The position numbers were made by a program, and so were the translations under genes. Of a DNA stretch of 32,000 nucleotides, positions 1 through 22,182 are shown one piece after another. The stretch covers positions 210,001-242,000 of the forward strand of contig NW_008806284.1 of the NCBI RefSeq assembly GCF_000400465.1, in the 5' to 3' direction. The DNA is from Wallemia ichthyophaga EXF-994. Its lineage: Eukaryota > Fungi > Basidiomycota. Position 1 is the first letter of the stretch, and each line of letters opens with the position of its first letter. Below the pieces are notes generated by a model. It did not search any database. It saw only the letters and a program-made list of their open reading frames with translations, and had not been told where the DNA came from.

Positions 1-638
1 CTGACCCTATCAAACCAGCGCTGAAGTGCGAGACGCACACGACGGTCATCTTCCTCTTCGCTCTGTGCGTTGGAGGAGTTGGCGGGGAGTGCGGGAATGA
101 TAGTGGAAGGGTGTGCCTGAGTGAGCTGCTCACTCAACCGCGTCACCTCATCGTATGTGCGCTGTACACCACGATAAACAGAGCTGTTGCGAGATGTTGC
201 TGTCCCACCGCCTGTATCATAGTCGGGGATATTCGTACTCGCGTCAAATTCAACAAGATAGTCACGTCGATTCTTGGTAATACCAGTAACGCGAATTTTG
301 AGGAAAGGGGGGGAATCAGCCGTGGTTGTATGGTTATTACTGCTTTTAATGCTGTTGCTACCAGCAGTGGTTATGACAGATGGCTGCGCAAGTGGGGCTG
401 TTGGCTGGCCATATATCTTAGCAGTGGAGGGTATACTGAGAGTGGATGAGTTCCTGCTGCGTGGTGGTTGCTGTGTATGCTGTTGCTGTTGACGCTCCCT
501 TTCCCTCTCTTCCAGCGCTGGCAAAGGCTTATCCGTGGAGAGAGATGTGTGCAGTGAGTGCGACGCCGGCGCATCTTCCCAGGCGTTTGAGCTGTCGTAG
601 AGTGTTGGAGCTGATTGGCTGAGTGGATCACTGTTCAT
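1..638 (-). CDS. VPS17: Retromer PX-BAR subunit Vps17, N-terminal part (runs off window start)
   Basis: ATG at 638 opens a stop-free frame to base 1 (absent from ORF track): MNSDPLSQ...PFLKIRVTGITKNRRDYLVEFDASTN...VQRTYDEV...HPSTIIPALP...EEEDDRRVRLALQRWFDRV, matching the fungal Vps17 PX domain as I recall it. Confidence 0.8.
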   Translation of the reverse strand, partial: MNSDPLSQSAPTLYDSSNAWEDAPASHSLHTSLSTDKPLPALEERERERQQQQHTQQPPRSRNSSTLSIPSTAKIYGQPTAPLAQPSVITTAGSNSIKSSNNHTTTADSPPFLKIRVTGITKNRRDYLVEFDASTNIPDYDTGGGTATSRNSSVYRGVQRTYDEVTRLSEQLTQAHPSTIIPALPANSSNAQSEEEDDRRVRLALQRWFDRV

Positions 639-706
639 CGTCCAGGAACAAGAAGTAAAAGAAATAAAATAAAAAATATAATTATTCAGGTTATCTGATA
701 ACCATC

Positions 707-1393
707 ATGTCGAGAAGCACACAAGTTACAATCACCGCCGCACCTTGGAAATCACTGCTAGAGAATACGCTAAATGAAAATAAAGAAAAGACTAAAAATA
801 TATTCAACGTTGCTGTTGGTACAGTCCAAGGGAATAGACCTAGAGTGAGGATGATGGTACACAGGGCATTCCAAGGAAATCTACTCCTTACGACAACTGA
901 TATACGTATGAACAAGATACATCAATTGGAAGATTCCTACGTTGATAACAAAGGCTCACCAATCGATTATGTCTTCTGGATTGAACCTGCTATCCGTCAA
1001 TTCAGATTCACCGGTAACGCTTTCCTTCTGCCTTCACCTTGTCATCGTAATCCAACTCCCTTATCAGATTACCTCATTAATTCTGGTATCGACTTTGAGC
1101 AGAAACGCATTGACATCTATAACTCCATGTCACGCTCTTTACGCGCTTCTTTCGCTAAACCTTTCTCGCCTGGAAGTCATAGATCTTGGGATGAAAATTC
1201 TCATCCGTCTCCCGATAAAGTTGAGTCAGATGACCAAGATGAGTGGTATCAAAAGGGCTTAGACAACTTTGCATTGCTCGTTGTAGACCCATTTCAAGTT
1301 GATTACTGCGATCTCCTCACTCAACCAAATCAACGTAAGGTATTCACACTCAACGAGCAAAACGCGTGGATTGAAGAGGATGTACACCCATAA
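707..1393 (+). CDS. Pyridoxamine 5'-phosphate oxidase-like FMN-binding protein (Pyridox_oxase_2 type)
   Basis: Single-exon 228 aa ORF with APWK, RPRVRMMVHR, TTDIRMNKIHQL, FWIEPAIRQFRFTG and NFALLVVDP motifs typical of this split-barrel family. Confidence 0.8.
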   Translation: MSRSTQVTITAAPWKSLLENTLNENKEKTKNIFNVAVGTVQGNRPRVRMMVHRAFQGNLLLTTTDIRMNKIHQLEDSYVDNKGSPIDYVFWIEPAIRQFRFTGNAFLLPSPCHRNPTPLSDYLINSGIDFEQKRIDIYNSMSRSLRASFAKPFSPGSHRSWDENSHPSPDKVESDDQDEWYQKGLDNFALLVVDPFQVDYCDLLTQPNQRKVFTLNEQNAWIEEDVHP

Positions 1394-1414
1394 TGTATAT
1401 AATCATATAAAATC

Positions 1415-2146
1415 TTAATCCAAACTTAAATTGATCGCTGGCATTTCATTCTGTCGCTTGTTAGACGTAGTAACGGGTGTATTACCACCAGATTCATCCT
1501 CCACCTCCATGAATTTTACTCTTTGTCTGTGTAGTAACGGCAGCTTAGGCGTGAGCGTTACCAACAAAGCCACAAAGTTGAATGCAAATAACCAGCTCTG
1601 AAATTTGGTATAGTGAGTTGAAATCAAGAACAATCCAATTGGCACACAGGTAAGCCACTTGCGAGCAGGCGTATACTGAGCACCGCCATCAATCTGTTCC
1701 CAGAATGTAAGCTCATCCCATGCGCCATTGTTGCTCTCAAAAGGAACTCCCTTGACGTGATGGAACATGAGGAACGTGACTGCCATATAACCGCAGTTAA
1801 CCAGTGTCCAGCTGATTTCCTGTGTCATTCCAGGTAAAGCGTCTATTAACAGCTTCCCAAGCGTCACGAGCACTACATGCATCAGCCACGCGCCTTTGAA
1901 ATTTACCCAGTCAGCGTTGTAGTTGTTCAGTGCTCCTTGATCTAGCGTCTCCTGTGCATCTGCTGGTACTTCCTGTAAACTAACAAGCGATGACGATCTC
2001 CCCCTCCTTCTCCTCTGCGGCGGTGGTTGTGATTGTGATTGTGCTTGCGTCTGGTGTGCGCTCCCACTGCCGCCACCACTCCCACTCCCACTCTCCTCTC
2101 CTGATATCACCAGACTCGGTATTGGCGGTGTTGTTCGCGCTGTCAT
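1415..2146 (-). CDS. ORM1: ORMDL-family serine palmitoyltransferase regulator
   Basis: NADWVNFKGAWLMHV, SWTLVN, FHHVKGVPFESNNG, LTFWEQIDGGAQYTPARKWL and LISTHYT are ORMDL signatures. First in-frame ATG is at 2146 (243 aa). Confidence 0.92.
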   Translation of the reverse strand: MTARTTPPIPSLVISGEESGSGSGGGSGSAHQTQAQSQSQPPPQRRRRGRSSSLVSLQEVPADAQETLDQGALNNYNADWVNFKGAWLMHVVLVTLGKLLIDALPGMTQEISWTLVNCGYMAVTFLMFHHVKGVPFESNNGAWDELTFWEQIDGGAQYTPARKWLTCVPIGLFLISTHYTKFQSWLFAFNFVALLVTLTPKLPLLHRQRVKFMEVEDESGGNTPVTTSNKRQNEMPAINLSLD

Positions 2147-2889
2147 TTCTCCTCGCTTTTGCTCTTCGCTGTTGTGAATCAACCGTTCTTTGGGTGTTTT
2201 CCCACTTACGTTTTCTTTTTTCTTGTTTATTCATTTGCCTTGTTATTATAACACTCCTCTGTTCTCTAATTATTCCCTCCACGCTGCTTTCATTTCCCGC
2301 TGCACTGCAAAATCCTCGGCTGGAATGCTTCTCAAGCTTATCATACGCAGTATATCCGTTACCAGTCACAGCTCGCTCTCACTCACTCTCTCGCCCTCTC
2401 TCACCATGTGGAGACGCTGGTGGAGGCGTGCCTGACTTCCTATCCCGCCCCAACGCAATCTAACGCAATCACAGACGTGTTGGAGGCATGTAGCACACTC
2501 CACACTACCTGAGCTGACCATGAGCCTGAGCGTATCAGTAGCTCTGTCGTTGCACAACATTCTCCACGCGTTGTGCCATCTTTGTCTTGCAGCCGCGAGT
2601 GCCTTTTAGCAACTACAAATACACATATACTCCCTTTTCCACCTCAACACCGCCCAATGGCCACTTTTTCCTTACAGTCGACATTGAGTCCAGTAGTCCA
2701 GTGGAAGCCGTCCAATTTCACGTGTCCTTACGCAACATGCGTTGTGAAGGATTCTTACGTGTGTTGTGTGTGTTATTAGGTCTTTATCTGTTCAAACAAC
2801 CGAATCACACCATTGAATCGCGTGCCTGCCCTATTATCTGCCCATTTGAGCTCGTTGGAATGATGCTGATGCGGCTGTCACAATAGCAA

Positions 2890-3477
2890 GCTCAATGACG
2901 TGTTCGTCACAACACTGTAATCACTGCAGACCACGCCAGATTTGGGAAATTTGGAGCACCTAGCTGTTCGAGGAGGTCGAGGGTGCTTCTATTGCGACTG
3001 GCTCTGCCCTATACTCGGTACCGTTCCAGCCAGACAGGTATATCTCAAGAGAGAAATTCGGAATATATAGATGCACACTCATCATATCCCGCTTTCTGAG
3101 ATTCCAACGCAGCCTTGACCGCTTTCATACACCCATTATACGAAATTTCAAACTGCACCTGATCGACCCAAAACTCCGATTTCAGAGTTTGGCTGACCCC
3201 CTCTTTTCTCTGCATAAATAGCTTTTAAAAGGTATAAAGTGAGGTGAAACAGCAATGATTTTCTCCTGGTTTCGATTTTAAATCTTCTGGAAGCAACTCA
3301 AGTCGACTTGTCTGGGTGCGCAACACGCCTTTCGAGGGGTAAATACTTGAGCTTTTTGGAAACAAGCTGAAGCATATCAGCGGAGCCCTTGAATTATTTT
3401 GTATCTTCCTAATTGAAGCATCGGTATGTGGCGGTATTTGCACGATAGCTTGCTCAATGACGTATACGTCACAGCAC
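2890..3477. promoter_or_regulatory. Two paired CRE/ATF-like modules upstream of ENA (2890-2915 and 3452-3477)
   Basis: GCTCAATGACGTgttCGTCACAaCAC and GCTCAATGACGTataCGTCACAgCAC. The second contains the perfect palindrome TGACGTATACGTCA (3458-3471). Confidence 0.5.
3053..3359 (+). repeat. Diverged third copy of the ENA-flanking repeat
   Basis: 3154-3216 (TGCACCTGATCGACCCAAAACTCCGATTTCAGAGTTTGGCTGACCCCCTCTTTTCTCTGCATA) aligns to the starts of both flanking repeats. 3341-3359 matches 3895-3913, and 3053-3140 resembles 8308-8385. Confidence 0.75.
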
Positions 3478-3710
3478 CAAAACGATTAGCAATATAAACG
3501 TTCTTGGTTTCGTCATGTAGCGAGCAACTGTGTAAATAGGAGACAGGTAAGCTTTTCATAAATAGCCCAGTGATTTTTTCTGTCCTAGTTCAATTGCATG
3601 TGTCATTGTGAAGGAGTAGTGTAGTAGCTAAAAATATCTTAGCGTAGTAAACTGACTTCTGCAATTTCAAATTGGCCTCAAATCCCCCTTATCATGATAA
3701 GTCGATTTTC

Positions 3711-4139
3711 CGAAATGCACCTGGTCAAGCCAAACCCCCCTGATTTCGGAGTTTTCGATGACACCCACTTTTCTCTGCATACCTCTGTTTTTCCAAGCGT
3801 GAAGTGAGCGAAATGGCAAAAACTTTTCTTTGGTGCCAACTTTGAGTCGTGTAGACGCTACGCAACATAAAACGTTTTTCGCGTTTATAGGGCCAAATAT
3901 TTGAGATGTTTGGGTGCTTGCGATCTCTATAAATCAAAATGACTTGCTTTAATCGATTGAGCGCGTTATTCTCTCATTGTCTTGTTTATTTCGTGCTCTA
4001 AAGCAATTTAGATTTATTCCTTCCGATCAGCTTGCAAGGCGCGATAAGGAGCGCCAAGGATACAAGTTTGGCAAAGTCATATTCATTTCAATCATAGCTT
4101 CCAATAAAGCTATTTAATTTGGAGATCATCAATAGTCGT
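3711..4139 (+). repeat. Direct repeat, left copy (upstream of ENA)
   Basis: 3749-4139 is identical by eye to 8433-8823. The ORF track shows the same spurious peptide in both copies. The first ~38 bp differ slightly. Confidence 0.97.
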
Positions 4140-4609
4140 TAGTCTTTCAGCCATATTGAGATGGCAGACGTCGAGGAAATCGGATATAGACGACAAAGAT
4201 AGCTCTGGGGTCCTCGGAATCCCATGAGAGTAATTGTCAAGCTATATTGCATGCAACGGGAGACGTTCATACCAAATTAATTGTTGCAAGGGTGTTAATC
4301 TGGCAAAAGTCTCTTCAATCAGTCAACTCTACCTTCAGATCCAATCCATTTGCCATCGCTTCGTTTTACTCCGGTCTTCATATTCCTGAAACATGCCAAG
4401 AATGCTCGGCACGCGCTACCCACTCACCACCAATAAGCCCAGCATTACAGCAAAGCTATAGGAAATGCTACGACTAAATACCTGAAGGCTGCTTTCTTCG
4501 AAATTTCACCACTTTAATTTCGCAAGCGTGCGAATAACCTGAATGATCTCCTCCAATACAAGTACCTCATCAACTGCCGAGAGCTATAAAATTTATAAGC
4601 AAAATTAAA

Positions 4610-7600
4610 ATGCGCTCACTCCGCGAGTCATTCTCATCAACAATGACAATGTTTTCAAACAAACAAACTGAAAAGTTCTCATCTACTGAAAAATCTGATC
4701 AAAGTGGGTATCGCGCGGGGTTGCTGCCGCATAGCTAAAGTTATCATACAGCTCCAGCTCATGTGAGAGACTCGTCCGACATTCTCCATGAACACAGCGT
4801 CGATCCTTTACTGGGCCTTTCTTTCGACAGGGTCGATCAACTGCAGAAAGAATTCGGTCCTAACAGACTGAGACCTCCGCCCAAGCCATCTTTACTAAAG
4901 ATATTCGGTACGCAGCTCGGTAACGCTGTAAGTCTTATTGTGATATCATCTCATAATCTCACATGTCGTCATTGCAGATGACACTGGTTCTGATAGCTGC
5001 AATGGCTGTCTCTTTCGGTACACAAGACTGGATCGAAGCAGGAGTTATTGCTGCTCTCGTTATTCTCAACGTCACTGTCGGATTTACCCAGGAGTGGAAG
5101 GCTGAAAAGACAGTTGCTGCCCTAGAAAGCGTGAGTGCTTTGGTCCGTACAAAATAGCCACACTCTGACTTACAAATTCAGGTCGGAAGTCCTGTCGCTG
5201 TTGTTGTACGCCACGATGCTTCAAACAAAGGTCGTGAAGGAAAAATTATCGATGTTCAAACCGACGAAGTAGTTCCAGGTGACATTATGATGGTTAAAAT
5301 CGGAGATATCATTCCTGCTGATGGGAGAGTTATTGACAATCACATCTCCAACCTGGAAGTAGACGAAGCCTTGTTGACAGGTGAATCACTACCAGTCTCT
5401 AAGCAAACTGAGACCCTCGATGACAAAACATGCCCGGTTGGTGATCGTATTAATATGGTTTTCTCCGGTAGTCAAGTGACAAAAGGCAGGGCTAGATGCG
5501 TAGTCACCTCGATAGGGATGAAAACTGAGCTCGGTGCTATATCCGAGGCTTTGGCAACGAAAGCTGATTCTAAGAAACGCGGCTGGAGAAGATTTTGGGA
5601 GAAGACCCAAGTTTTCTTAGGTGTTAAAGGTACAACGCCACTTCAAATCAAATTGAATAAGTTAGCTTATTTACTACTGGTATTAGCAATCATATTCGCC
5701 ATCGTCGTCGTTAGTTCGACTGGATACGTCGACATCCCAGATTCTACCGCAACTTACGCAGTCGCTACTGCTATTTCTCTTTTACCTGCTTCGCTCATTG
5801 CTGTAGTGTCGCTTACACTTGCAACATCTTCGAGAGAGCTAGCTAAGAGGAATGCATTGGTTCGTAAGATGGACGCTATTGAAACCTTGGCAGGGGTAAC
5901 GGATATCTGTTCAGACAAGACCGGTACAATCACTGTTGGAAGAATGGTTCTGAAGAAGGCCTGGGTACCTTCACGTTTTGAAGCACCGGATACCAAAGTT
6001 GGACAAACCTATGCCGTCGAATCGGGTAAAGATCCTTACTATCCAAGAGGCACAATACAAGCACAGGATGATAATGACGACGACAATGAAAGTGGTATAT
6101 CAGATAGCGATGCCGTTCATGTGAATGAATTGGATTCTTCATTCCAGGAACTCGTTCAATCGGCTGCACTCAACAATATGGCAACAATTTCAGCTAGTGA
6201 CGAAGGAGGGGACTGGGATGCTCAAGGAGATCCAACGGAAATCGCTTTACAAGTCTTCTCTCACAAGGCTGGCCACGGTAAACCTCACTTGACTCATCCA
6301 CCTAAACACAGAACAAAGAAGGAAGATCATCCTGCACCTAAAGCCGATGTAGACGGTCACTTTGAGATACTAATCGAACATCCCTTCGATTCATCTATAA
6401 AGAGAATGACTACCGCATGGAAGTTGGTTGGTGCTCAGGGCGGTGACGACGATGATTCCAAGCAACATATTTTCATTTACATGAAGGGTGCAGTCGAGAG
6501 GGTGTTAGAAAGATGTACACATGTTTCAATAGGTGATAAATCAATAGAGATGTCAGAGGAAGCCAAAGATGACATCATCAAGAAGATGGACCAATTAGCA
6601 GCTGAGGGTTTGCGTGTTTTGGCTCTGGCTGGAAGAACAGACCGTCTTTCAAATGCCCAGACTGTGAAGGAGACTAAAAGAGATGATGTAGAAAATTGTT
6701 TCGGACTGTTAGGCTTAGTTGGTATATTTGATCCGCCAAGACCTGAGTCTAAAGGGGCTGTCTACGATTCAAGACGCGCTTCGATAGTTGTGAGAATGCT
6801 TACAGGTGATCATGCAGCAACAGCTGCATCCATCGCAATGTCAGTGGGCATTCTAGATAAGAATCACTCAAAATCTGCTGTAATGACTGGCCAGCAATTT
6901 GATGCAATGACTGATGAAGAGGTAGATGCACTTGAAGAACTCCCCGTTGTGGTAGCGAGATGTGCTCCTGAAACTAAGACTGGATTCGTTGATGCCTTAC
7001 ATCGTCGCAAACGTTTAACTGTTATGACCGGTGATGGTGTGAACGATTCACCTGCATTGAAGAGAGCCGATGTTGGAGTCGCAATGGGACTTAATGGCTC
7101 AGATGTTGCAAAAGGTGCTGCCGATATCGTATTGGCAGATGATAACTTCTCAACTTGTGTTCGTGCAGTCAGAAAGGGTAGATCAGTTTTTACGAACTTA
7201 TCAAAGTTTCTGGTCTACTTGCTAGCTAGTAATGTGTCTGAAGTCTTGGTTTTACTCGTTGGATTAGCTGTTCGTTCTGATGGCGATGCTGTCTACCCTA
7301 TTTCACCAGTCGGTGCACTGTAAGTGGAGAGTATGCTATGTGGATTGTCTGACAAATATCAAAGCGTAATCAATACTCTTACTATTGGCCCAGTAGCTTT
7401 TGCTCTGGGTGTCGAGCCTACGGCAGATGACACTATGCTTCAACCACCTAGCAACTTCTTCACGATATTCACGCCTAGATGGTTTATGGATTTATTCGCC
7501 TTTGGAATTATGGCGGGTGCACTATGTTTTGCTAATTTCATTATTGTCATCTATGGAAGAAACGATGGCAATGAAGATGTTTCTGCAAGTTGCAACGAAG

Positions 7601-8107
7601 GTGCTGTCAATAGTGAATGTGAAGTGATATATAGGGCAAGAGCGGCAACATATGCCTCACTTTTGCTCATGCTGATGGTCCTAGCATTCGATTGCAAACA
7701 TAGTACTCGCAGGTAGGTAAATTGTAGTACTAAAGTCCTCATCCTAATAACCTATTGCAGCGTTTTCAAGATGAATCTACTAGACAACAAGCTTTTAATT
7801 TGGTCAGTTGCTCTGCTTTCGCTCAGTGTCTTTCCAGTTATCTACATTCCCGGTGAGGTGTATCTTCCTCTAACATCACATTCTCATATGATTATTAGTC
7901 ATTAAAGATCGCGTTTTTCAAGTTACTGGTATTGGCTGGGAATGGGGTATGATTGCGGCAACAGTTTTGGTTTACTTTGGTTACTTAGAAGTCTACAAAG
8001 CTATCAAGCGTTTGTATGAGAGAAGACTGATGAGAAATAGTGACCTGGAAAATTCAAATGGGAAGGAAATTCGAATGGCACCAACGATGGAGCCTAATAC
8101 TGTTTAA
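4610..8107 (+). CDS. ENA1: P-type IID Na+/K+ efflux ATPase (ENA family), 7 exons, ~1069 aa
   Basis: Exons 4610-4703, 4752-4927, 4978-5130, 5182-7319, 7365-7712, 7761-7852, 7899-8107 splice in frame. Motifs: LTGES, ICSDKTGT, GDPTEIAL, MKGAVE, MLTGDH, MTGDGVNDSPAL, WEWG. M4 LPASL lacks the Glu of SERCA/PMR1-type pumps. Confidence 0.9.
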
Positions 8108-8397
8108 ATAAATTACACTATACTTATCGCTGACATAGTTGATATCTTCATGTCCACAGGCAGAGAGAGTAGGAGGCAATAAGTATCAATGTAAAGAAGC
8201 TTATTTTACCCTCTTGATCTGATTATGCGCGCTCATATCCTGATTGGCGTTGCGCAACGCTCTGTAATCGTTGAACCAATATTGGCATGTTGCGGGGATA
8301 GTGATTTGGAATTTCGAAATTATACATTCTTATTATAGGGACTTCTAAAATCCCAGCGCATCCTTAACCCCCTTCATACTTTCATTGCTTGACATAG

Positions 8398-8823
8398 CGA
8401 ATTGCATCTGGTCGAGCCAAACCCCGATTTCAGAGTTTTCGATGACACCCACTTTTCTCTGCATACCTCTGTTTTTCCAAGCGTGAAGTGAGCGAAATGG
8501 CAAAAACTTTTCTTTGGTGCCAACTTTGAGTCGTGTAGACGCTACGCAACATAAAACGTTTTTCGCGTTTATAGGGCCAAATATTTGAGATGTTTGGGTG
8601 CTTGCGATCTCTATAAATCAAAATGACTTGCTTTAATCGATTGAGCGCGTTATTCTCTCATTGTCTTGTTTATTTCGTGCTCTAAAGCAATTTAGATTTA
8701 TTCCTTCCGATCAGCTTGCAAGGCGCGATAAGGAGCGCCAAGGATACAAGTTTGGCAAAGTCATATTCATTTCAATCATAGCTTCCAATAAAGCTATTTA
8801 ATTTGGAGATCATCAATAGTCGT
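8398..8823 (+). repeat. Direct repeat, right copy (downstream of ENA)
   Basis: 8433-8823 is identical to 3749-4139. Identity ends abruptly after AATAGTCGT. Confidence 0.97.
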
Positions 8824-9352
8824 ATATCATCTGAGGTGGTAGAGGAGAATTCCAAGTTGGTGGGTATTGAGCGGAGGGTTGAAATGAGGATGCATTTGGA
8901 ATGCTGAAGCTGCAAAGGAAATAATGGTCTTGCTAAATTGTTGAAATTGTGAGTATATGATATGATATTTCCGCGTTTGTCTTCTCACTAACTTGGTAAT
9001 TTCCGGTTACCTTCAGCAGATCTAAATCAACAAAAATGGTTCATGATTTTGCAAGCTTCTGATATTTCTAACAAAAAGTGCTCAAAGCTCAATGTCATCC
9101 CACAATCACATCTTGAAGTCATCAGATATGTAGACACGATTTCCAGTTTGAGTGTTTGTGGGGTTTAACTTGAGGAATAGCTTAGTTCTATGTCCAAGCA
9201 CTTCTTAATTTTGAAACTGAGCGGAGGTAACGAAGGAAGAAGGCAGATTCAAGGCACAAAAAGGGATGAAAAGCACGAAGCAGCAGCCGGCTGGTAAACA
9301 ATCAAAATGATATTATTGTACATGGCCATCTGTATAAAAGTTAATTATTGTT

Positions 9353-10081
9353 TTAAATGAAACAACTGAAGTGCAAAACAAGGGAGATGGAAATAGTAGC
9401 GACAAAGGCGACGACGTGGGAGTGATTGTAGCCATTTGCATTTGATGTCTCAGAATCTAAATTGACTTCATCCTGTTTAGATCCACCACCGTTCTTGATT
9501 TTCTCTTCAGCCGCATCAGATGCAGGGTAGTTGTGATGCAAAGGCAGAGTATCTTGATCGATAGGACCTTCTCTAAGTGATCCGATACCCCATGGAGTAT
9601 CCTTTCCAGATTTAGGCTGGGTTTCGTGGGAAGGTGGTTCAGAATCGCCATTTTCACCTGTAATGGTAAATCTAGTCGACCATGCTTTGTCGGTTGCATT
9701 TTCAGAGTTGTAGAATTGCAAAAAGTAGATTTGGGAGTGTGGGGTGACTGTGTCTGGGAGTGTCCAATTTATTTTGCCCTGGTCCTTGTTTGGTACGCTA
9801 ATATTTTCTGCAACTTTGCCAACGAAGACCTGAGCGGTAGGTTAGAGTAATGTTGACAAGGTGATACCAGAACTCACCGTGTACAAATCAGGACCAGTCA
9901 TCAAATCAATAGAGAATTTATTCCATATTTCCGCTTTGTTTTCAGTATCGACATCAAATTTAATGGTCTGGTTGGATCCGACGGCCCATTTCGAGTCTGG
10001 AGAAGGTTCGGTGGGTAAGACTTTCGCTAAGACATTCGTTGAAAGAAGAGCAAGTAAAAGGTTTAGACAAAAGTATAACAT
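9353..10081 (-). CDS. Secreted/GPI-anchored Kre9/Knh1-like cell-wall protein, 2 exons, 226 aa
   Basis: Exons 10081-9878 and 9829-9353 (intron GTGAGT...CTAAC...CAG). Signal peptide MLYFCLNLLLALLSTNVLA; PTEPSP, IDLMTG, IYFLQF, WSTRFTI motifs; hydrophobic C-terminal tail. Confidence 0.8.
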
Positions 10082-10150
10082 GGTTGGTGTATAAGAGATA
10101 GCATTTCGAATATTGAGCAAGGTTTAGACTAAATCGGTAGATTGGAATGT

Positions 10151-11380
10151 TCAAATACTTGTAGATGACGTATGTGATGAGGCTTTGGTAGAAATATGTT
10201 TTACGAATGAGATAAATAGCTGAAAATCGAAGCCTTCGAGCCATCTAAAGTGTAGAGTGTTTGAATTGGGTTCGTGGCTCTCAATGGAAATGGATAGCTT
10301 CGTTGGATTAAAGTGAGGTGTGAGGGGGTTAGTAGCAGCTCTTCTAGAAGATCTTGACCATGAGTTGATCCCCATAATGATTACAAACACACTACCCTCA
10401 CTACGATGACTGATGTACACGCTTGATAGCTGATTGATTAAGGAGATCATCGCATCAAGGTTGATTGGGTGGTTGAGGTTGTGAGTGTGATGAGTGGAAG
10501 GTGGATTCAATTTGAATAGTGATTTGTTGTTCGATCTTGCTAGTGAGTTGTCCAATCTGTACGGCAAGAATGACCATGCTAGCAGCCACCTCAGTGTGTT
10601 ACCCCGATTAATAACGTTCAAAGCATAATTCGATATGTTGTGCTTATTCAAATATTTGATTAGGATTGATAGATTTGATTTTATGCCGATAAGTGTGGAG
10701 TACCAGACAACCTTGTGCTTAAGTTTGATCGACTGGTTTATGAGTTTTAAAATGAATCCAAGCTCACCGCCTTCTGTGTACAGCTCATTGGTAGATCCCA
10801 GATTCAGTCCACTCGGATGATTCGACTTGATATTCTGTCTACTAACCTGACCTGCATCGTAGAAAGGTGGATTCATTATCAAGAAATCAAATTGAGCGTG
10901 ATTGTCTGTTATTTCCGAGGGAATTAGATTGTTATCATCTCTATCTACACCAACCAGCTTAATCTTATCGTCCAAGTTGTTACGATCAATGTTGGAAGCA
11001 GCCAACTCTAGTGAGGAGTGATCGATATCGGTTGCATAAACCAAGCAATTGTCAAACAATCTAGCAGCTAGTATTGGATATATGGGGAGGTAACCAGTAC
11101 CGATATCGATCAAGTTGAACGTATCACCGGGGCTTACATGACTCCGCCATATACTCTTTATCCAATTCAGGTAGTCTAGTCTGTTGGGTATTGTAGGCAT
11201 GAGCTTGTTTTGCACTAGGCTAACTTGTAAATTAAAGTAAACCTTTAGTATAGCCAGTGTTAAGTGTTTTACAGACAATTCATCCTTGAAATTAATCTTG
11301 TTTTGTTTATTGACAAATGGCTTCAACTTGCTGTACCTTGCAGCCAGCCAATTAAAATCAATCTCATCCAAATTTACCAT
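10151..11380 (-). CDS. METTL16: METTL16/RlmF-family RNA m6A methyltransferase
   Basis: 409 aa with LMPTIPNRLDYLNWI, DIGTG, IYPIL, ATDID, MNPPFY, GGELGFI, WYSTLIG and RWLLAWSF. Confidence 0.9.
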   Translation of the reverse strand: MVNLDEIDFNWLAARYSKLKPFVNKQNKINFKDELSVKHLTLAILKVYFNLQVSLVQNKLMPTIPNRLDYLNWIKSIWRSHVSPGDTFNLIDIGTGYLPIYPILAARLFDNCLVYATDIDHSSLELAASNIDRNNLDDKIKLVGVDRDDNNLIPSEITDNHAQFDFLIMNPPFYDAGQVSRQNIKSNHPSGLNLGSTNELYTEGGELGFILKLINQSIKLKHKVVWYSTLIGIKSNLSILIKYLNKHNISNYALNVINRGNTLRWLLAWSFLPYRLDNSLARSNNKSLFKLNPPSTHHTHNLNHPINLDAMISLINQLSSVYISHRSEGSVFVIIMGINSWSRSSRRAATNPLTPHFNPTKLSISIESHEPNSNTLHFRWLEGFDFQLFISFVKHISTKASSHTSSTSI

Positions 11381-11411
11381 TGTTTTATGTAAAGAAATTC
11401 AATAATCATAT

Positions 11412-12515
11412 TTAATGCTTAACAAGACAAAGGACATCCTCATCTTCTAATATATGGTCTAATCCGACCTTTTGACCTCTTGGATGTTTAGATGACTTGC
11501 CCCAAACAACGGCGTACTTGAGTTGCTTTGCGATTTCCTTGTGAATTGCATGTGCAAAGTGCTCAACAGTACATCTACCCTTTCTCAAAACAACTGGTGC
11601 CGTATAGTCTGGTGCTCTACCTTTGGGTCTTGTGTAAACTCTAACGAGCTGCAATCTCTGCCACATAATATCAATCAATTCATCAACGTTTAACCATTGT
11701 GACGATGAGATTGGAACAGAGTTTGGAATTTGATAGAGAAGATCCAATTCTTCAATTGAAATTGCATCAATCTTGTTTAAACAGTAGATGCAAGGGATGT
11801 ATACTCGGTTACCTTCAACAACATCAATCAGCTGGTCAACAGAGATATCCTCCCTAATCATAACATCGGCATTAGGTATTTTGTACTCTGACAAAACAGC
11901 CTTGATCTCTTCAGGTTCAATCTTTGTGAGTGGTACAGTGTTTGTGATAGCTATACCACCTTTTTCCTTCTTCTTTACTGAAATGTTTGGTGGTGATTGA
12001 TTTAGTCTAATACCGAAACCTTCCAATTCCCTTTCAATGACGCCCTTATCGTTTAATGGCTTCAATACGTCAAGTACAATGAAGATCAAGTTGCAAGTTC
12101 TTGAAACCGCAATGACTTGTCTACCTCTACCCTTACCATCTTTGGCACCTTCAATGATACCCGGCAAATCCAAAACTTGAATAGGTGCACCAAAAACATT
12201 CATTGTACCGGGAACAGTTGTAAGAGTAGTGAACTCGTAAGCAGCTGTCTCAGAGTGTGTGCCAGTTAATTTGGACATTAAAGTTGATTTACCAACTGAA
12301 GGGAAACCAATGAAACCGACTGAAGCTAAACCAGTCTTTGCAACATCGAAACCAACTCCAGGGCCACCACCACCAGAGGAAGAAGGAGTGAGAAGTTCCT
12401 TCTTGTATTTACTGAGCTTAGCTTTTAGCTGACCCAAATGGTAATTTGTGTTTTTATTCTTTTGAGTTCTAGCCATCTCATCCTCGATATCCTTAATCCT
12501 TTGTACCGTACTCAT
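11412..12515 (-). CDS. RBG1: Developmentally regulated GTP-binding protein (DRG1/Rbg1)
   Basis: 367 aa with [39 protein letters not shown] and a C-terminal TGS domain. Confidence 0.95.
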
Positions 12516-12704
12516 TTTAAACTAATTTATTATGGTGGATGCTCACTCACAAGATTTGAATGAATACCTACGTCAGTTTCTAACTTTAAATAAATATAAA
12601 TTAACATTTAAAACAAAAACTACATTTTTAAATAAATTACTATAATATCCGCTGATCTCTGCTTCGAGCTATAAAATTTTCAATTTTCCTTCAAGACTAT
12701 GCTT

Positions 12705-14572
12705 TTATCCTGCTTGATTTGGTTGATTTGGTTGACCTGCTTGAACCGTTTCAGCCATTTGATTCGATTGTGCTGGTTGAACTACTGGGGCATGAAGAGG
12801 CGTCATTGACATAAAGCTGTGAATTGATTTTCCATTTGAATTGTTGCCCGGCGACTGTGGTGGACTTGCCCCAGCGCTGTTTGTCGCAGAGTTTGTCTGA
12901 CTATTAGGCAATGACCTTATCGCACTCTGCATAGGCGTTGATGAACTACCACTGATACTACTGCTTGGACTTGGATGGACGGGTTGAGGTGGCGACCTTA
13001 GTATCTCCTCTATCTTGTTTCTATTATCTAATGGCAGCGCTGGAGGTGGATTCGCATAACCCATCTCCTCCGTACCACCCATGGTCGAGCTCGATGTCGT
13101 TGACTGCGCTAACGGTGGTAGTCTAAAGTTGGTAAAGTGTACTGGAGAGCTTGCTCTGCTGACGTTTGGTGAATTGTGTGCTGATGTCGATGGTGTTCCT
13201 CCTCTGGAATTTAGATTGAAATAACTTGGCGTTGGATACACTCCCGTGCTTGTTTGATTTGGAAATAGGTTGAGCGATCTTAGTGGGCCCAGTACAGGTG
13301 AACTTGAAGGTGTAAACTCTATGCCGCCAGGAACAACAGGATAAGCACCTAAATTCTGCTGTATAGAACTCTGTTGCTTTGTAGGATTAAAAGTAGTTGT
13401 TTTTGCATCCTCTGTATCACTAAAGTCACTCTCTGCAGAACTAACAGGGCTAACTGTCTGTGACTGCTCTGCGGAGGAGGTATTGAAGGAAGCATAAGGA
13501 TGATAATTATGTCTATGGGTTCTAAGATGTGGAGGTTCAGTGAGAGTGTGCTCTCGTGCACTTAGAGTGCTAAGTTGATCACCTGAATAACTTTTATGGA
13601 AAGGCATAGAGGAGGTTGAAGGGGTAGTAAAAGAAGGTTGAAGTTGTGGCTGCATTTGATAAATGTTACCTTTGTTACCCTTCATCCGCTTAGATTGCTG
13701 TTCCATCTGTCTACAATCATCATGATCGCAGTTTATGTCATCGTTGAGACTAATCGCCGCCTGATTAAAGTCAGGATGATGACAACGAATTGGTTCTTGA
13801 GGTTGTTGATGTTGTTGCTTTAGGTTATAAGGCATATTATAGCGTTGTGCAGGAGGATTGAGGAAATTGAATTGATTGTTGTAAGGATTGAAAGAGGTGT
13901 TTGGAGAGCTTGAAGTGGAATTTGGCTGTGAGGAGATACCATCCTTGAGTTGCCTATGACGATATTCGTATTCAGCTCTTCTTACAGCTTCTTCTCTCTC
14001 TAATTCGTATAATTGATCAGCAGCTGCGGCGGCAAGAGCAGACATTTCATTAGCCGGCTGATAAGGAGTTGGAGGAAAAGAAGAAGTAGAAGAGTAAGCG
14101 TATGGGTTGAATTGGAGGGTAGGATTTGGGGGGATTGAGAGTGGATTAGCTTGTGCAGGGTTTTGAGTGCTGGGAGCTGATTGGCTGGGAGTAGCAGCGG
14201 AGTTAGCAGTAGCATTAACACTACCGCTACCGCTGCCACCGCCATTGCCATTCAAAGCCCTTTTACCTCTACCTTTAGGATTTGAATGAGTGCGCAGGTG
14301 CCTCGTAAGTTCATCTGATCTACTGAATCTTTTATGGCAGCCAGGGTGAGAGCATTGATGAGGCTTTTCACCTGTATGAGTTCTAATATGCCTAGTCTGT
14401 ATAAATCCAGTTAACGGCTTATCTAGTGAATGATATACGGCCAACCAACCTGATGCTCCAAACGATAAAAAGCTCTATCACATAAAGGACACTTGTAAGG
14501 CCTTGGAATTTTGGATTTATCGACGTTAAGCGCTTCCTCGATTTGCTTTAATTTATATTTTTCATTTGACAT
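12705..14572 (-). CDS. creA: C2H2 carbon catabolite repressor CreA/Mig1, 2 exons, 604 aa
   Basis: Exons 14572-14450 and 14396-12705 join as [19 protein letters not shown]|[37 protein letters not shown]. Also carries [13 protein letters not shown] and LPPL motifs. Confidence 0.92.
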
Positions 14573-14602
14573 GTTATGGTTGAGGTACAACAACAAGATA
14601 AT

Positions 14603-15194
14603 TTAATCAACGGCCGTTCTCTTCTTAGGGTTGACTGCGTTGGCTGTGTTGGCTGCAAAGCTCACATCCCCGTTATCTCCAGCAGGTACGGCCGCTTTCA
14701 AATGTCCCCAGCCGCCTCGGCCGCTATCATACTCCTGTCGGTATTCATCTCGGACTTGACCACCGGATCGACCACGTCCAAATTGACGACCATCTCTATA
14801 ACCTTGTGCATCTAAATCACACCTAATCATTCTCTCATCGAGTTTTGTACCGTTTATATACCTTAAAGCTTCAACTGCCTCTTGATGCGTATAATATTCA
14901 ACAAACGCAAATCCACAGGGCGTTTTAGTATTCCTATCTAATCCCATTATTATTCTCTTTATACCCTGTCCACTAGCCACTCTGCCGAACAACTCATATA
15001 TCTGTTCCTCTGTCGTGTAGAATGATAGATTCCCGCACTAAAATACATTATAAATATTAATATACTCATTTTCACACACTCACATACAGCGTCGTTGACC
15101 TATCAAGCATATCCCTCTGCTTCTCCGGGTCAATACTCGAACGCGTATCTTTATACGTTGAAGGTCCATCTAGGGGCTGTATAATTGAACTCAT
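14603..15194 (-). CDS. CBC2: Nuclear cap-binding protein subunit 2 (CBP20), 2 exons, 181 aa
   Basis: Exons 15194-15084 and 15037-14603: STTLY|[66 protein letters not shown]. Confidence 0.95.
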
Positions 15195-15391
15195 ACTGTT
15201 TATTTGGTTATTCTAATTATCCAATTGATCGACGTTGGTTGTGTGTGTTTAAGTGGTGTATTATGATTTTTCTGTTTTACTTGACAATTAATAGCCAGCA
15301 GCTATAAATTACTTGTCACTAGTATTTTTATATTTTGCTTGAAATTTAAAGATCTGTTGATCAAGAACTGCCATCCACACGATAACAAACC

Positions 15392-16077
15392 ATGTCTAGT
15401 CCGTCAACAGTACAATACCTGCTTCACCTAACATTTCCTCAGAATTAACCTATAGGCTATCAAATATCCCACACACAGCCACTATCAACGATGTAAAGAG
15501 AGTTATTGCTAGATCAACTAATATCAATCAAATCTCAGCGGATAATCATTTTATAAGTGGGTTTGCTACTATCCACAATACTACTCACTCACCCATCACC
15601 ACAGCTTCTTTCAGAAGTTCAAAATTCCCAAACTATCCAAACACAGCGACAATCAAATTCCTAAATCCAAAGCCAGCCGAGAATTTGAGGAATTCTTTAA
15701 AGACTATAAACACTCTCACTCTATCAACCTCTCAGATCAAGTGCCTACCTTTAGATAAGCCTAGCCAAGAAGACGTTTCTTTGACTCACTTTGAACCAGC
15801 AACCCACCCAGGCCAAATCGTTGTCTTGTCTGGTTTGCCTGCTAAAATCAACTCATTTGATATCCAATCCTATCTCAAACCTTATTATCTCGATAACTCC
15901 CCTAACTCCTCGGATCCCATCACCAACATACGCATTCCCTCCGATAAGTTCAGCAGCACCTCCAAATGGCTCGTCAGGCTCAACTCTGTATCTGAAGCTC
16001 ATCGCTTGGTGCGCAACCTCAATCAATCCAGCTGGGTCGATTCACATTATACGATTAATGCAAGAATAATTTATTGA
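15392..16077 (+). CDS. Hypothetical protein with two RRM-like segments, 2 exons, 213 aa
   Basis: Exon 15392-15398, a 44-bp intron (GTCCGT...CTAAC...CAG) and exon 15443-16077 give MSKLTYRLSNIPHTATINDVKRVI... and VVLSGLPAKINSFDI...WLVRLNSVSEAHRLVRNLN. Confidence 0.65.
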
Positions 16078-16109
16078 TCCGTTATCCACATATATAGACA
16101 TACACTTTG

Positions 16110-18581
16110 CTAATTCTTGTACTTTTTCTGCCTCTTTTCCTCTCTCTTCTCCTGGCGTGATCGATTGTCTAATTCTGGTTTATCATTCTTGTCCGCCTTA
16201 TCCACAATCTCCTCCTTTTCCTCATTGTCCTCTCTAGACTTACGCTTCTTCGCTACTGCTGGTCCTCTTCTATCCTCGTGCTGTTCACCACTCAATGGTC
16301 TATCAACAACTACACCATTAATCACTCGTGCTGCCTTCTTGACATTATTCACCTTGGTCAGCCCTGCATTTTTAACTTCCTCAGCCGTTTTCTCCCTCCA
16401 CTCCTCTATCCTTCTCCTAAACAGTGACAATCCAACCTTCCTAATCAGATACTTACCATACGCCGAGCCTGCTAAAAAGTCTTCGTGTTCGAGCAGTGAG
16501 TTGGCTATCTTCTCTCTAAAATATCCATCTGAAGTCTCGTATATCTTCTCTGCCACCCTGCTACCGACTCTCATATCCGCTAGCAGGTGATACGAACCGA
16601 GTAACTTTAGTCTCAATTTGTGTTTATATTTGAATGTAACAGCCTCTGAATCCATAATTCCATCAATTATACGCGAAGCTGGTGATGAACCACATATCTC
16701 TAGTATCCTTTCCATACTCAGATTTAAGAGGCTGTTCAGTATGGCTTCGTTGTGCGGTGTACCGAGATTGTACAGTGACAGAATTAGCTGTGCGCCTGCA
16801 CTTGTGAATCTGTCCGATTTCCCCTCCTTGTTTGACTGTTCCTTCTCTTCATCAGAGCTGCCTTCTTCGTCTTGATCGTTTTTCTCAAACATATCCTTGT
16901 GGAAGCGGCGGTATGACTGTTTAAAGTGAGCATGTCAGTACGGGCGCTTTTTTCAAACCACACCCACCTTCCATCTCTTCATCTCAAGCATGCACGGTAT
17001 GACATGCTGTGCTTGTGCTGTGCTCCGCGTGCTCAATCCGAAGCAATGCATGATGGCCTGTCAAGTGAGTTATGAATCGTGAGTCATGAGATCATGTGCG
17101 CTACTAAGCCAAAAATCCACTCACAGCCATGACATCCGCCTTAAATACATCCCGAAATACACCCACATCGCAATTCGCCATCAATGGCCCACTTCTATTA
17201 GTCTTGATTAATTTGCTTCCATTCTCGCGCAGTGCTGTTATAGCTCCCGCGAATTCTTTTTCAATGAATGTCCCGCTGAGACCGTTATCATTTCCCATCC
17301 TCTTGAGTGCCTTTGCATATACAAAATTACCGACGGGGTGCTTCATGCATCGCACTCCCCCCTTTCCAGTAAAGTAGAGTTGCCAAATAACCTCAAAAAC
17401 GGCAGAGCTTGAACATTCCATGGCAGTCTCGGTTGTGTGACTTGCAGTAGTGTCGAGTAGCGTAGTGGTTACGTGACTGCTAGCCTTAATTTGACTGATA
17501 TCTTCTGAATTCACCTGTCCTATCAAACCATCCATCCATGAATCCAAAAAGCTATCTGCGTTGTCGTTCTCTTTGTTTTTCTTCTCGTAGTGCAACAGCA
17601 GTTGAAGAATTGGTGCTCCATAATCACTCACCCCAAATGCCCTTATCTCAGCTGGAGAGGAGAAAGAGTCGAATAAAGCTTTGCGAAGCTTGTTAGAAAG
17701 CTCTTTAAAGTGTTTTGGTGGACGGTAGTACTCCTCCGGCTGCTGTTCATTCACGGCATCAAAGTTATCATGTCTGGATAGCCAATATTGTGACTTTTTC
17801 GAACGCTTCATCACGCTGTCGCTTACATCGCCAGATAACAAATGAAGTAAGTATCTGACGGGGTAGGTTGCGTGTGGATTGAGGATATGATCGCCGATCT
17901 TAGGTACTATCTCGTCCACCATCTCCACTATGAGCTTCGTTATAGTGCGTAATTCTCCCGCAGGTTCCTCGCTTTCATTGCTGGGAGGCTTTGCAATGTT
18001 TCCAGAGCTCTCTCTCATGATAGTACCTTTGGAGGACTCGAAGAAAGTCTCCAACACGTGACTGCCGAATCTGTTGCTGATGATGGTATTGATTTCGCCC
18101 ATCAAGGCATCCGCAAAGACCCTCTTCTCGAAATCACCCATGCGCTTGATCATGTGCTCCACCATAAGCGCGCATTCAGGATCAGTTGATAAGCAGAGTT
18201 CGTTTGAAGCCATTTCAGTGAGAGTAGCCTCCATCATCATTGCGTACTCGTCGTCGTCGGCCGTACTGCCATTGGTGAGTCTCTGGTCCATGTCTCTGAG
18301 ATAGCTCTTGAGATCTGGGTTCAAATCACCATAAGGAGTACTAGCTTGCTGGGAATCCAATAGCCAGTTGGGAGCTGCTTGATCTTCTTGCTGTGGGGCT
18401 GCCACGGGTTCCTGCACCGCCTGCTGCTCCTCTGTAGCCTTCTTGGAGATCTTCTTGCCTTAAAAACCCATCAGCTGGATCAACAAGCCACGGCGAATAC
18501 AAAACTCACCTCTCTTCCTTATCTGATCTTTAGGCCTGTGAATCTATTAGCTGCGTGTATACTCGCCCATCTCTCTCACAT
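16110..18581 (-). CDS. NOP9: Nucleolar Pumilio-repeat protein Nop9, 5 exons, ~752 aa
   Basis: Exons 18581-18580, 18535-18510, 18458-17125, 17057-16968, 16916-16110. N-terminus MPKDQIRKRGKK; NRFGSHVLET, HTTETA, HPVGNFV, SPASRIID and GSRVAEKI Puf-like repeats. Confidence 0.88.
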
Positions 18582-18634
18582 TAATGTTGGGCGTCGTTTC
18601 TCAACCAACAACGACGACGGTCTAATAAATTTAA

Positions 18635-19121: not shown

Positions 19122-19155
19122 GACATATATATCCCAATGTATCATATAATGCTTT

Positions 19156-20775: not shown

Positions 20776-20863
20776 ATTTTTTATCTCAAGATGGTTCGGG
20801 TTAATGACGCGACGTCGTACCCATCCCCATCTCGTTGATATAAACGTCGAGATAGAAAAATTG

Positions 20864-22125: not shown

Positions 22126-22182
22126 TATACCAACTATACTATACAACTACTGTACAAATCATTTAAACGACCCAATTTGTAA

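What the first reader, a model, noticed from the sequence alone, without database searches (positions are those of the whole stretch)
3711..8823. ENA salt pump enclosed by identical 391-bp direct repeats: candidate amplification/excision cassette
Seen: 3749-4139 and 8433-8823 appear base-for-base identical and same-orientation, giving a 4684-bp unit. The unit contains exactly one complete ENA gene, its proximal promoter and its 3' region, with no transposon coding sequence. Established: S. cerevisiae ENA genes form copy-number-variable tandem arrays affecting Na+/Li+ tolerance, and direct repeats allow unequal crossover or pop-out circles. Inference: this is either a pre-built gene accordion for salt adaptation, the residue of a contracted array, or a multi-copy array collapsed in assembly. 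Perfect identity in non-coding DNA implies recent recombination or conversion.
Basis: partly seen in the sequence, partly recalled or inferred. Interest (0 to 1): 0.8.

Follow-up and report, generated by a model that had tools for sequence, protein, structure and literature searches.

The report
Repeat-flanked sodium pump gene, deletable
In the extreme salt-loving fungus Wallemia ichthyophaga, one of its two sodium-export pump genes sits between two identical 391-base repeats, and at least one natural strain carries exactly the single-repeat, pump-less version of the locus, so the gene is a removable (and apparently dispensable) cassette, not a proven amplification device.

Summary
Window 3749-4139 and 8433-8823 are identical direct repeats (R), 4,684 bp apart. 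They enclose one intact ENA-type (IID) P-type ATPase gene and no transposon ORF. The organism is Wallemia ichthyophaga EXF-994, not S. cerevisiae, and the gene is the published EOR00553.

New here:
- R is the middle of an older ~830-bp non-coding repeat family, with four diverged copies found.
- R's right edge is a non-homologous breakpoint. Its left edge runs into ~65%-identical old homology.
- A W. hederae-like relative has the same locus without ENA but with a relic of the repeat, so ENA1 is a lineage-specific insertion.
- Independent k=120 assemblies of other strains break exactly 119 nt inside R.
- One strain (SPNX01000013.1) crosses the locus with a single R and no ENA, which is the exact product of R x R recombination.
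- At least four strains have ENA1 broken at 5496/5497 and joined to another scaffold.

There is no evidence of amplification. Copy number cannot be read from any available assembly. Published data show low, salt-unresponsive expression.

Verdict: a real recombination cassette with natural presence/absence variation. The "salt accordion" reading is unsupported. Interest is moderate.

The parts
1415..2146 (-). Left flanking gene, ORMDL family
   Evidence: Pfam PF04061, E = 2e-56. Called as ORMDL in L001/L005. Syntenic in the outgroup L035.
2985..3301 (+). Copy A: old, partial member of the ~830-bp E repeat family
   Evidence: 65% to 8231-8549 and 69% (3141-3301) to 3703-3865. Aligned with C and D in A1.
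3579..3748 (+). Bup: diverged E-family sequence immediately left of the left R copy
   Evidence: Significant but weak homology to Cup and to D-left (SW scores 26.5 and 29.5, 0/500 shuffles). The last ~100 bp are 65% identical to Cup.
3749..4139 (+). R, left copy: 391-bp perfect direct repeat
   Evidence: 391/391 identical to 8433-8823. ENA contigs of other strains start 119 nt before its right edge.
4140..4642 (+). ENA1 upstream region (promoter / 5' UTR), unique sequence
   Evidence: No homology to E-right. 4421-4698 is 62% identical to the region upstream of the outgroup's ENA.
4643..8107 (+). ENA1 (EOR00553), type IID Na+/K+-efflux P-type ATPase. Exons 4643-4703, 4752-4927, 4978-5130, 5182-7319, 7365-7712, 7761-7852, 7899-8107
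   Evidence: 100% match to P0001/EOR00553. Spliced model reproduces all 1058 aa. TIGR01523 scores 878 bits against a cut-off of 645.
5496..5497 (+). Breakpoint of the 'type-2' rearranged allele, in exon 4 near codon 235
   Evidence: In L012 (SPOJ01000038.1), window 5497-8551 (99.87%) abuts scaffold KE007240 sequence 185 bp upstream of SPS19.
8108..8230 (+). ENA1 3' flank, unique sequence
   Evidence: Lies between the stop codon and the start of E-family homology.
8231..8432 (+). Cup: left part of the complete E copy C
   Evidence: Aligns with D (L017 17226 onward) and A from E position 1.
8433..8823 (+). R, right copy
   Evidence: Identical to 3749-4139. Right-flank contigs of 12 other assemblies stop 119 nt inside it, and Logan contigs stop 67 nt inside it.
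8824..9062 (+). E-right: right part of copy C. Follows the single R directly in the ENA-less allele
   Evidence: 65% to D (L017 up to 18052) over 846 columns. SW score 69.5 vs shuffle maximum 18.5. Colinear in L028.
9353..11380 (-). Right flanking genes: Kre9/KNH-domain protein and Methyltransf_10 protein, fused into one model in the reference annotation
   Evidence: Gene calls in L001, L006, L028 and L035.

Best explanation
ENA1 (EOR00553) of Wallemia ichthyophaga is a lineage-specific, dispersed duplicate of the fungal sodium/potassium efflux pump gene. It was inserted between the ORMDL and Kre9/methyltransferase genes, into a pre-existing ~830-bp non-coding repeat element (E).

The insertion left 391 bp of E (R) on both sides of the new gene. 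The right edge of the left R (4139|4140) is a non-homologous junction. The left edge lies where two old, ~65%-identical E-family sequences meet. One event that would produce this is a copy-paste or template-switch type of repair that re-copied R (inferred).

Because the two R copies are identical and in direct orientation 4.7 kb apart, homologous recombination between them removes the whole 4,684-bp unit and leaves one R. It could equally add a second unit.

Shown: the structure, its presence in many strains, the ENA-less syntenic locus in a sister lineage, and a natural single-R allele.

Inferred: that the single-R allele arose by deletion rather than being the never-occupied site, the insertion mechanism, and that the pump is dispensable.
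For: 1. Structure. The repeat pair and unit are confirmed. There is no homology right of R but old homology left of it.
2. R belongs to a family. Copy C (8235-9062) matches copy D on scaffold KE007240 (L017 17226-18052) at 65% over 846 columns. Copies A and B are partial.
3. Sister lineage. In a W. hederae-like relative (SRR25399871; its SKT5 is 97% identical to W. hederae's), the syntenic GTPase-methyltransferase-Kre9-[2.7 kb]-ORMDL-Vps5 locus has no ENA. It does hold an E relic in the syntenic orientation (z = 8.3, 0/200 shuffles). That organism's ENA lies at an unrelated locus, and homology to the window is limited to 4421-8114.
4. Other strains. ENA sits on its own 4501-4667-bp contig covering 4021-85xx/86xx, and right-flank contigs stop at 8705. 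That is 119 nt into R, as expected for the published k=120 IDBA assemblies.
5. Single-R allele. SPNX01000013.1 (215 kb) crosses the locus and aligns without a gap to window 1-4139 + 8824-22605 at 99.83%, with R unchanged. It can do so only if R is unbranched in that genome.
6. Published context. W. ichthyophaga has two ENA genes and W. sebi has one (PMC3849046).
Against: - Direction of the polymorphism is not resolved. The single-R allele (Bup-R-E-right) is what both a pop-out and an unoccupied site would look like, and Bup vs Cup could not be polarised against the outgroup.
- ENA1 differs about 16% at the nucleotide level from the only other ENA sequence recovered, while the R copies are identical. 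So either the insertion at this site is much younger than the gene duplication and the donor is unknown, or R is homogenised by conversion, or the identity is partly an assembly effect (K=21 reference).
- No read-level data were available. L028 is a single contig from a reference-guided short-read assembler.
- No duplication allele, tandem junction or circle was seen.
Confidence: 0.68

Rival explanations
1. Recent insertion with the empty site still segregating. The SPNX single-R allele is the original, never-occupied locus, and the R-ENA1-R allele is a young insertion that has spread to most strains. No excision has occurred.
For: - The outgroup has an ENA-less locus with one E relic and a similar intergenic length: 2.5 kb in L028 vs about 2.7 kb in L035.
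- The two R copies show zero differences, which is compatible with an age no greater than the species' ~0.3% diversity.
- Linkage decays fast in this species (1270 bp; PMC6738226), so old and new alleles could coexist.
Against: - No near-identical donor ENA copy is known. The published paralogue is 92% identical at protein level, and the other ENA sequence recovered here is 84% identical at nucleotide level.
- Cup and Bup are as diverged as unrelated family members, so part of the structure is old.
- Only one of about 19 informative strains carries the empty form.
Confidence: 0.22
2. The locus is really a tandem array of two or more ENA1 units (an S. cerevisiae PMR2-like array) that every short-read assembly collapses to one unit between two R copies.
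For: - The assembly graph left-R-unit-R-right is identical for 1 or N copies.
- The reference used K=21 with inserts of 2 kb at most, and the population assemblies used k=120 with PE150 reads.
- All ENA contigs end inside R.
- S. cerevisiae S288C carries five tandem ENA genes and CEN.PK carries one (PMC3364882).
Against: - No positive evidence for an array.
- Neither paper reports excess depth or ENA copy-number variation.
- ENA1 transcript level is very low.
- Genome sizes are very uniform, 9.51-9.70 Mb.
Confidence: 0.15
3. R is a transposable-element end (solo LTR or non-autonomous element), and the pair flanks ENA by chance or forms a composite mobile element.
For: - R belongs to a dispersed family with at least four copies in the ~60 kb of reference sequence examined.
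- It contains a TATA-like motif and no conserved ORF.
Against: - Family members are only ~65% identical. There are no terminal inverted repeats, no TG...CA ends and no obvious target-site duplications, and no TE protein domains.
- Exact R is not a high-copy sequence, because a k=120 assembly runs straight through it when the cassette is absent.
- The left copy is truncated exactly where identity ends, which fits a duplication breakpoint rather than two independent insertions.
Confidence: 0.05

Closest known systems
S. cerevisiae PMR2/ENA locus (ENA1-ENA5 tandem array, variable between strains)
   Same: - Same protein family (type IID P-type ATPase).
- The gene unit is bounded by direct repeats that allow unequal crossover.
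- Copy number differs among natural strains: five in S288C and one in CEN.PK (PMC3364882), and 1 vs 0 here.
   Different: - Here only one unit is demonstrable.
- The repeats are 391 bp of a non-coding element, not neighbouring gene copies.
- The gene is lowly expressed and not salt-induced.
- The second ENA gene is dispersed, not in tandem.
Non-allelic homologous recombination between flanking direct repeats (e.g. LTR-LTR pop-outs leaving solo LTRs, yeast CUP1 arrays, low-copy-repeat-mediated deletions)
   Same: Identical direct repeats of a few hundred bp, a deletion allele whose junction is exactly one repeat copy, and clean flanks.
   Different: The repeats are not LTRs or gene copies. They stem from a partial duplication of an older, uncharacterised repeat. 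The reciprocal duplication product has not been seen.
[quoted passage not shown] 2013 (EOR00553, EOR04078)
   Same: The gene in the window is EOR00553 itself. The expansion from one ENA (W. sebi) to two is published.
   Different: No mention of ENA, of this locus's repeat architecture, of presence/absence variation or of a rearranged allele turned up in term searches of either paper.

Membership tests
Type IID (ENA, fungal Na+/K+-efflux) P-type ATPase | Full-length match to the equivalog model TIGR01523 above its curated cut-off | tested here: met
   878.4 bits against a cut-off of 645, residues 42-1030 on profile 26-993/997. The next-best families fall below their cut-offs.
Type IID (ENA, fungal Na+/K+-efflux) P-type ATPase | P-type catalytic motifs: DKTGT phosphorylation site, TGES in the actuator domain, TGDGVND hinge | tested here: met
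   CSDKTGTITVG, LLTGESLP and MTGDGVNDSPALK are present in the translated gene.
Type IID (ENA, fungal Na+/K+-efflux) P-type ATPase | ATP-driven Na+/Li+/K+ export at the plasma membrane | not testable with these tools
   Needs expression, for example in an S. cerevisiae ena1-5 deletion laboratory strain.
Tandem ENA gene array (PMR2-like) | Two or more head-to-tail ENA units at one locus | tested here: inconclusive
   One unit in every assembly, but all assemblies are short-read and break at R. tblastn finds no ENA remnants elsewhere in the window.
Tandem ENA gene array (PMR2-like) | Unit number varies between strains | tested here: met
   One unit vs zero units (L028). No allele with more than one unit was seen.
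Direct-repeat (NAHR) deletion/duplication cassette | Flanking repeats in direct orientation with long uninterrupted identity | tested here: met
   391/391 bp, same strand.
Direct-repeat (NAHR) deletion/duplication cassette | A natural allele equal to left flank + one repeat + right flank | tested here: met
   L028 aligns without a gap to window 1-4139 + 8824-22605 at 99.83%.
Direct-repeat (NAHR) deletion/duplication cassette | Reciprocal product: duplication, or an excised circle with an 8432-R-4140 junction | not testable with these tools
   R (391 bp) exceeds the read and k-mer length of all available assemblies. Needs reads or outward-facing PCR.
LTR retrotransposon / solo LTR / composite transposon | Transposon-encoded proteins between or near the repeats | tested here: not met
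   Only ENA lies between the repeats. The small ORFs have no Pfam hit at E <= 0.1.
LTR retrotransposon / solo LTR / composite transposon | Defined termini (TG...CA or terminal inverted repeats) with target-site duplications, and multiple near-identical copies | tested here: not met
   No terminal inverted repeats or matching flanks at the ends of copies C and D. Other family members are only ~65% identical. Exact R is unbranched at k=120 when the cassette is absent.

The most novel reading that the evidence does not exclude
The R-bounded ENA1 unit moves as a circle. R x R recombination would excise a 4.7-kb circular DNA (R + 4140-8432), and this could re-insert elsewhere by illegitimate recombination.

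The 'type-2' allele shows window 5497-8432-R joined to the SPS19-SKT5 intergenic region of another scaffold, with no homology at the junction. It would then be a circularly permuted re-integration (SPS19 | 5497...8432-R-4140...5496 | SKT5) rather than a translocation. ENA1 would be a host gene that relocates through repeat-mediated eccDNA.
Probability: 0.1. Interest if true: 0.75.

Novelty: new member of a known kind. Interest (0 to 1): 0.45.

Why it matters
W. ichthyophaga is described as the most halophilic fungus known (PMC3849046). The published puzzle is that it has few, weakly expressed cation pumps, and the extra ENA gene is one of its few 'expansions'.

That extra gene turns out to sit in a recombination-prone cassette. 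It is missing in one natural isolate and broken in a lineage that appears to be the clonal saltern lineage. This gives natural loss-of-function material to ask whether ENA1 contributes to halophily at all.

The locus is also a simple, PCR-scorable system for measuring repeat-mediated gene loss or gain under salt or alkaline stress in a non-model basidiomycete. Mechanistically it is ordinary direct-repeat recombination, so the general novelty is modest.

Tried and rejected
- S. cerevisiae origin: rejected. There is a 100% protein match to W. ichthyophaga EOR00553, the window is identical to KE007234.1, and the gene has introns.
- ENA remnants upstream of copy A, as residue of a contracted array: tblastn found none in the window.
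- R as an RNA gene: no Rfam hit at E <= 1 other than a chance ssnA match, and no tRNA.
- R/E as a protein-coding gene: tblastx of C vs D shows stops in every frame.
- R/E as a TE: no terminal inverted repeats, target-site duplications or TE domains.
- Classical gene conversion between two old repeats as the sole origin of the identity block: disfavoured, because homology is absent right of 4139/8823.
- Polarising Bup vs Cup against the outgroup relic: no signal.
- E-family element next to the outgroup's ENA, as a possible donor of Cup: none found.
- Reciprocal junction of the type-2 allele: not recovered.
  - SKT5 look-ups returned only intact SPS19-SKT5 loci among the 10 places shown.
  - The Logan contigs were too short.
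  - The N-terminal ENA protein search returned only short foreign proteins.
- The second W. ichthyophaga ENA (EOR04078) never appeared in the protein searches, so its locus could not be compared.
- Supplementary files of PMC6738226 hold no accession-to-strain table.
Full report
**1. The observation**

An ungapped comparison at offset 4684 shows 3749-4139 and 8433-8823 to be identical at all 391 positions, in the same orientation. Self-BLAST of the window finds no other long repeat.

It does show that the pair sits inside a longer, older similarity. 3645-4139 ~ 8331-8823 is 92% over 498 columns. A third copy at 2985-3301 is 65% identical to 8231-8549 and 69% identical to 3703-3865.

The enclosed unit is 4,684 bp and holds one gene.

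**2. Organism and gene**

The 678-aa central ORF is 100% identical to a 1058-aa protein of Wallemia ichthyophaga. The cluster look-up names it EOR00553 of strain EXF-994.

The window is identical to GCA_000400465.1 scaffold KE007234.1 over 18,107 bp aligned, with 0 mismatches. The offsets place it at 210001-242000.

The gene has seven exons (4643-8107) that reproduce the protein exactly. It matches the fungal K+/Na+-efflux type IID ATPase model TIGR01523 at 878 bits against a cut-off of 645. The DKTGT, TGES and TGDGVND motifs are present.

So this is not S. cerevisiae. It is one of the two ENA genes reported for W. ichthyophaga, described as the most halophilic fungus known. The two genes are 92% identical to each other, and W. 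sebi has one (PMC3849046).

That paper also reports that both ENA genes are weakly expressed, ranking 3812 and 4613 of 4884. Only the other one, EOR04078, responds to salinity, being higher at low salt.

**3. What the repeat is**

R is the middle of an ~830-bp non-coding element that I call E.

- Copy C is complete (8235-9062). It aligns over 846 columns at 65% with copy D on another scaffold (KE007240; L017 17226-18052), which lies between the Med11 and R3H genes.
- Copy B (about 3579-4139) is truncated.
- Copy A (2985-3301) is partial and lies just upstream of B.

C and D share no open reading frame. There is no Rfam or tRNA hit, no terminal inverted repeats or recognisable target-site duplications, and no TE domain in the small ORFs. 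The nature of E is unknown.

The two edges of the identity block differ, and this matters.

- Right of 4139 there is no detectable similarity to 8824 onward or to the right part of D (score 11 vs shuffle mean 10.4). C-right and D-right, by contrast, align strongly (69.5 vs a shuffle maximum of 18.5). So 4139|4140 is a non-homologous breakpoint.
- Left of 3749 the two copies continue as old homologues. They are only ~65% identical over the last 100 bp, no closer than any two family members.

The block therefore looks like a segment duplicated in one event. One junction was illegitimate, and the other fell within homeologous E sequence. It does not look like a classical conversion tract between two old repeats.

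**4. The locus in a sister lineage**

A Logan assembly (SRR25399871) comes from a W. hederae-like organism. Its SKT5 protein is 97% identical to that of W. hederae and 93% identical to that of W. ichthyophaga.

This organism carries the syntenic block GTPase-methyltransferase-Kre9-[2.7 kb]-ORMDL-Vps5 at 75-80% nucleotide identity, with no ENA gene.

That intergenic region contains a relic of E, in the syntenic orientation only (z = 8.3, 0 of 200 shuffles).

The same organism's ENA gene is 91% identical in protein and 84% in nucleotides. It lies at an unrelated locus with SAE2, Ras, NTF2 and DLIC neighbours. Homology to the window is confined to 4421-8114, and there is no E element nearby.

So E was at this site first, and ENA1 with about 220 bp of its upstream region arrived later in the W. 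ichthyophaga lineage.

**5. The locus in other W. ichthyophaga strains**

The 21 population genomes were assembled with IDBA-Hybrid at a maximum k of 120 from PE150 reads (PMC6738226).

- In those strains ENA1 lies on its own 4501-4667-bp contig. Every one of these starts at window 4021, which is 119 nt before the right edge of R, and ends 89-255 nt into the downstream R.
- Right-flank contigs of 12 assemblies end at 8705, again 119 nt into R. Logan contigs end 67 nt in.

R is therefore a branching repeat with the same boundaries in all these genomes. The same graph would arise from one unit or from several, so copy number is not readable.

**6. A natural single-repeat allele**

One assembly differs. 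Contig SPNX01000013.1 (215 kb, GCA_004918315.1) runs from the GTPase side through Kre9, one R and Bup, then on to ORMDL and Vps5.

It aligns without a gap to the sequence 'window 1-4139 + 8824-22605' at 99.83%. There is no difference inside R.

A k=120 assembler can cross a 391-bp repeat only if the repeat is unbranched. So the R-4140 and 8432-R junctions are absent from that strain's data, or negligible in it. This also shows that exact R is not a dispersed high-copy element.

Whether it is a pop-out or the never-occupied site cannot be decided from structure alone. I favour deletion for three reasons:

- The Bup/Cup divergence indicates that part of the structure is old.
- No near-identical donor ENA is known.
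- Only one strain carries the allele.

Locus-tag order against accession order suggests that SPNX is genome 22 (EXF-12845, cod fish, Lofoten). This mapping is an inference. It is consistent with the published clonal clusters: 3 samples share contig L002, 4 share L003, and genomes 18 and 19 share P0122.

**7. A second structural variant**

It is an N-terminally truncated ENA1.

In L012 (SPOJ01000038.1, 97 kb), window 5497-8551 (99.87%) is joined cleanly to scaffold KE007240 sequence. The junction lies 185 bp upstream of the SPS19 start codon, in the SPS19-SKT5 intergenic region, with no homology at the junction.

The reference and at least 15 other assemblies have the intact SPS19-SKT5 adjacency. 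The contig passes the junction without a fork, so these strains probably lack an intact ENA1.

By the same tag mapping they belong to the clonal Secovlje saltern cluster (genomes 3-6, 9, 21). If so, a lineage that persists in hypersaline water has a broken ENA1.

I could not recover the reciprocal junction. A reciprocal translocation and a re-inserted, circularly permuted excision product therefore remain indistinguishable.

**8. Mechanism, stated plainly**

*Shown:*
- Identical direct repeats bracket one intact pump gene.
- The bracketed unit is missing precisely, leaving one repeat, in a natural strain.
- The gene is absent from this site in a sister lineage.
- The unit is rearranged in other strains.

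*Inferred:*
- ENA1 was copied into E by an event that re-copied 391 bp. Candidates are template switching or break repair using an ectopic donor that itself carried an E-like sequence (Cup).
- Since then R x R recombination has deleted the unit at least once.
- The same exchange between sister chromatids would generate duplications, but none is documented.

The 'salt accordion' idea is not supported by published expression data, nor by the natural loss alleles. It is also not excluded.

**9. Caveats**

- The reference was assembled with K=21 and inserts of 2 kb at most. The perfect identity of the two R copies and the single-unit count could both be products of collapse.
- L028 is one contig from a reference-guided assembler.
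- All strain-identity statements rest on an inferred accession-to-strain mapping.
- The second ENA gene (EOR04078) could not be retrieved from the protein database.

**10. Verdict**

The feature is real and correctly described. It is unproven on amplification and wrong on organism.

The mechanism is an ordinary one, non-allelic recombination between direct repeats, applied to a biologically interesting gene in an extremophile. The gene itself is published. ENA and this locus's architecture or variants did not appear in term searches of the two relevant papers.

Noticed in passing
window 5496/5497; L012 9980/9981; L017 (KE007240.1) 9815/9816: In at least 4 W. ichthyophaga strains (protein P0121), the 3' three-quarters of ENA1 plus the downstream R is fused to the SPS19-SKT5 intergenic region of another scaffold, with no junction homology. 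ENA1 appears to be disrupted there. The reciprocal junction was not found.
   Followed up: partly
window 2985-3301, 3579-4139, 8235-9062; L017 17226-18052; L035 ~13936-14394: An ~830-bp non-coding repeat family (E), with copies ~65% identical on two scaffolds and a relic in a sister species. It has no ORF, Rfam hit or TE hallmarks. Copy C has a TATAAA near 8613 and an intron-like GTGAGT...CTAAC...CAG at about 8950-9018. Its nature is unknown.
   Followed up: partly
window 30690-32000 (+): The start of a second P-type ATPase runs off the window end. It is 27% identical to ENA1 and has the motifs ITGESLAVDK and CSDKTGTLTANKL, typical of a PMA1-type plasma-membrane H+-ATPase. It is probably the published EOR00565, about 12 genes from ENA1.
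   Followed up: partly
window 9353-11380 (-): The reference annotation fuses a Methyltransf_10 protein and a Kre9/KNH-domain protein into one 467-aa model. Other strains and the outgroup call them as two separate genes (390-414 aa and 243 aa), so the fused model is probably wrong.
   Followed up: no
protein database: The second published W. ichthyophaga ENA (EOR04078, 92% identical) and its orthologues in the 21 strains never appeared among hits or cluster members. The only ~91% hit was a Logan ORF from a W. hederae-like run. No annotated W. hederae ENA was seen either.
   Followed up: no
L008/L009 ends (window 8757): Logan contigs, which I recall are built with a small k (about 31), from two W. 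ichthyophaga-like runs reach 67 nt into R rather than the ~30 nt I would then expect. This hints at a small difference between the two R copies, or a shifted boundary, in those strains.
   Followed up: no
window 3606, 3683, 3704: The single-R allele (L028) carries three SNPs clustered in the 150 bp just left of R (Bup), against about 0.2% elsewhere. It was not checked whether these are shared with other strains or reflect the recombination event.
   Followed up: no
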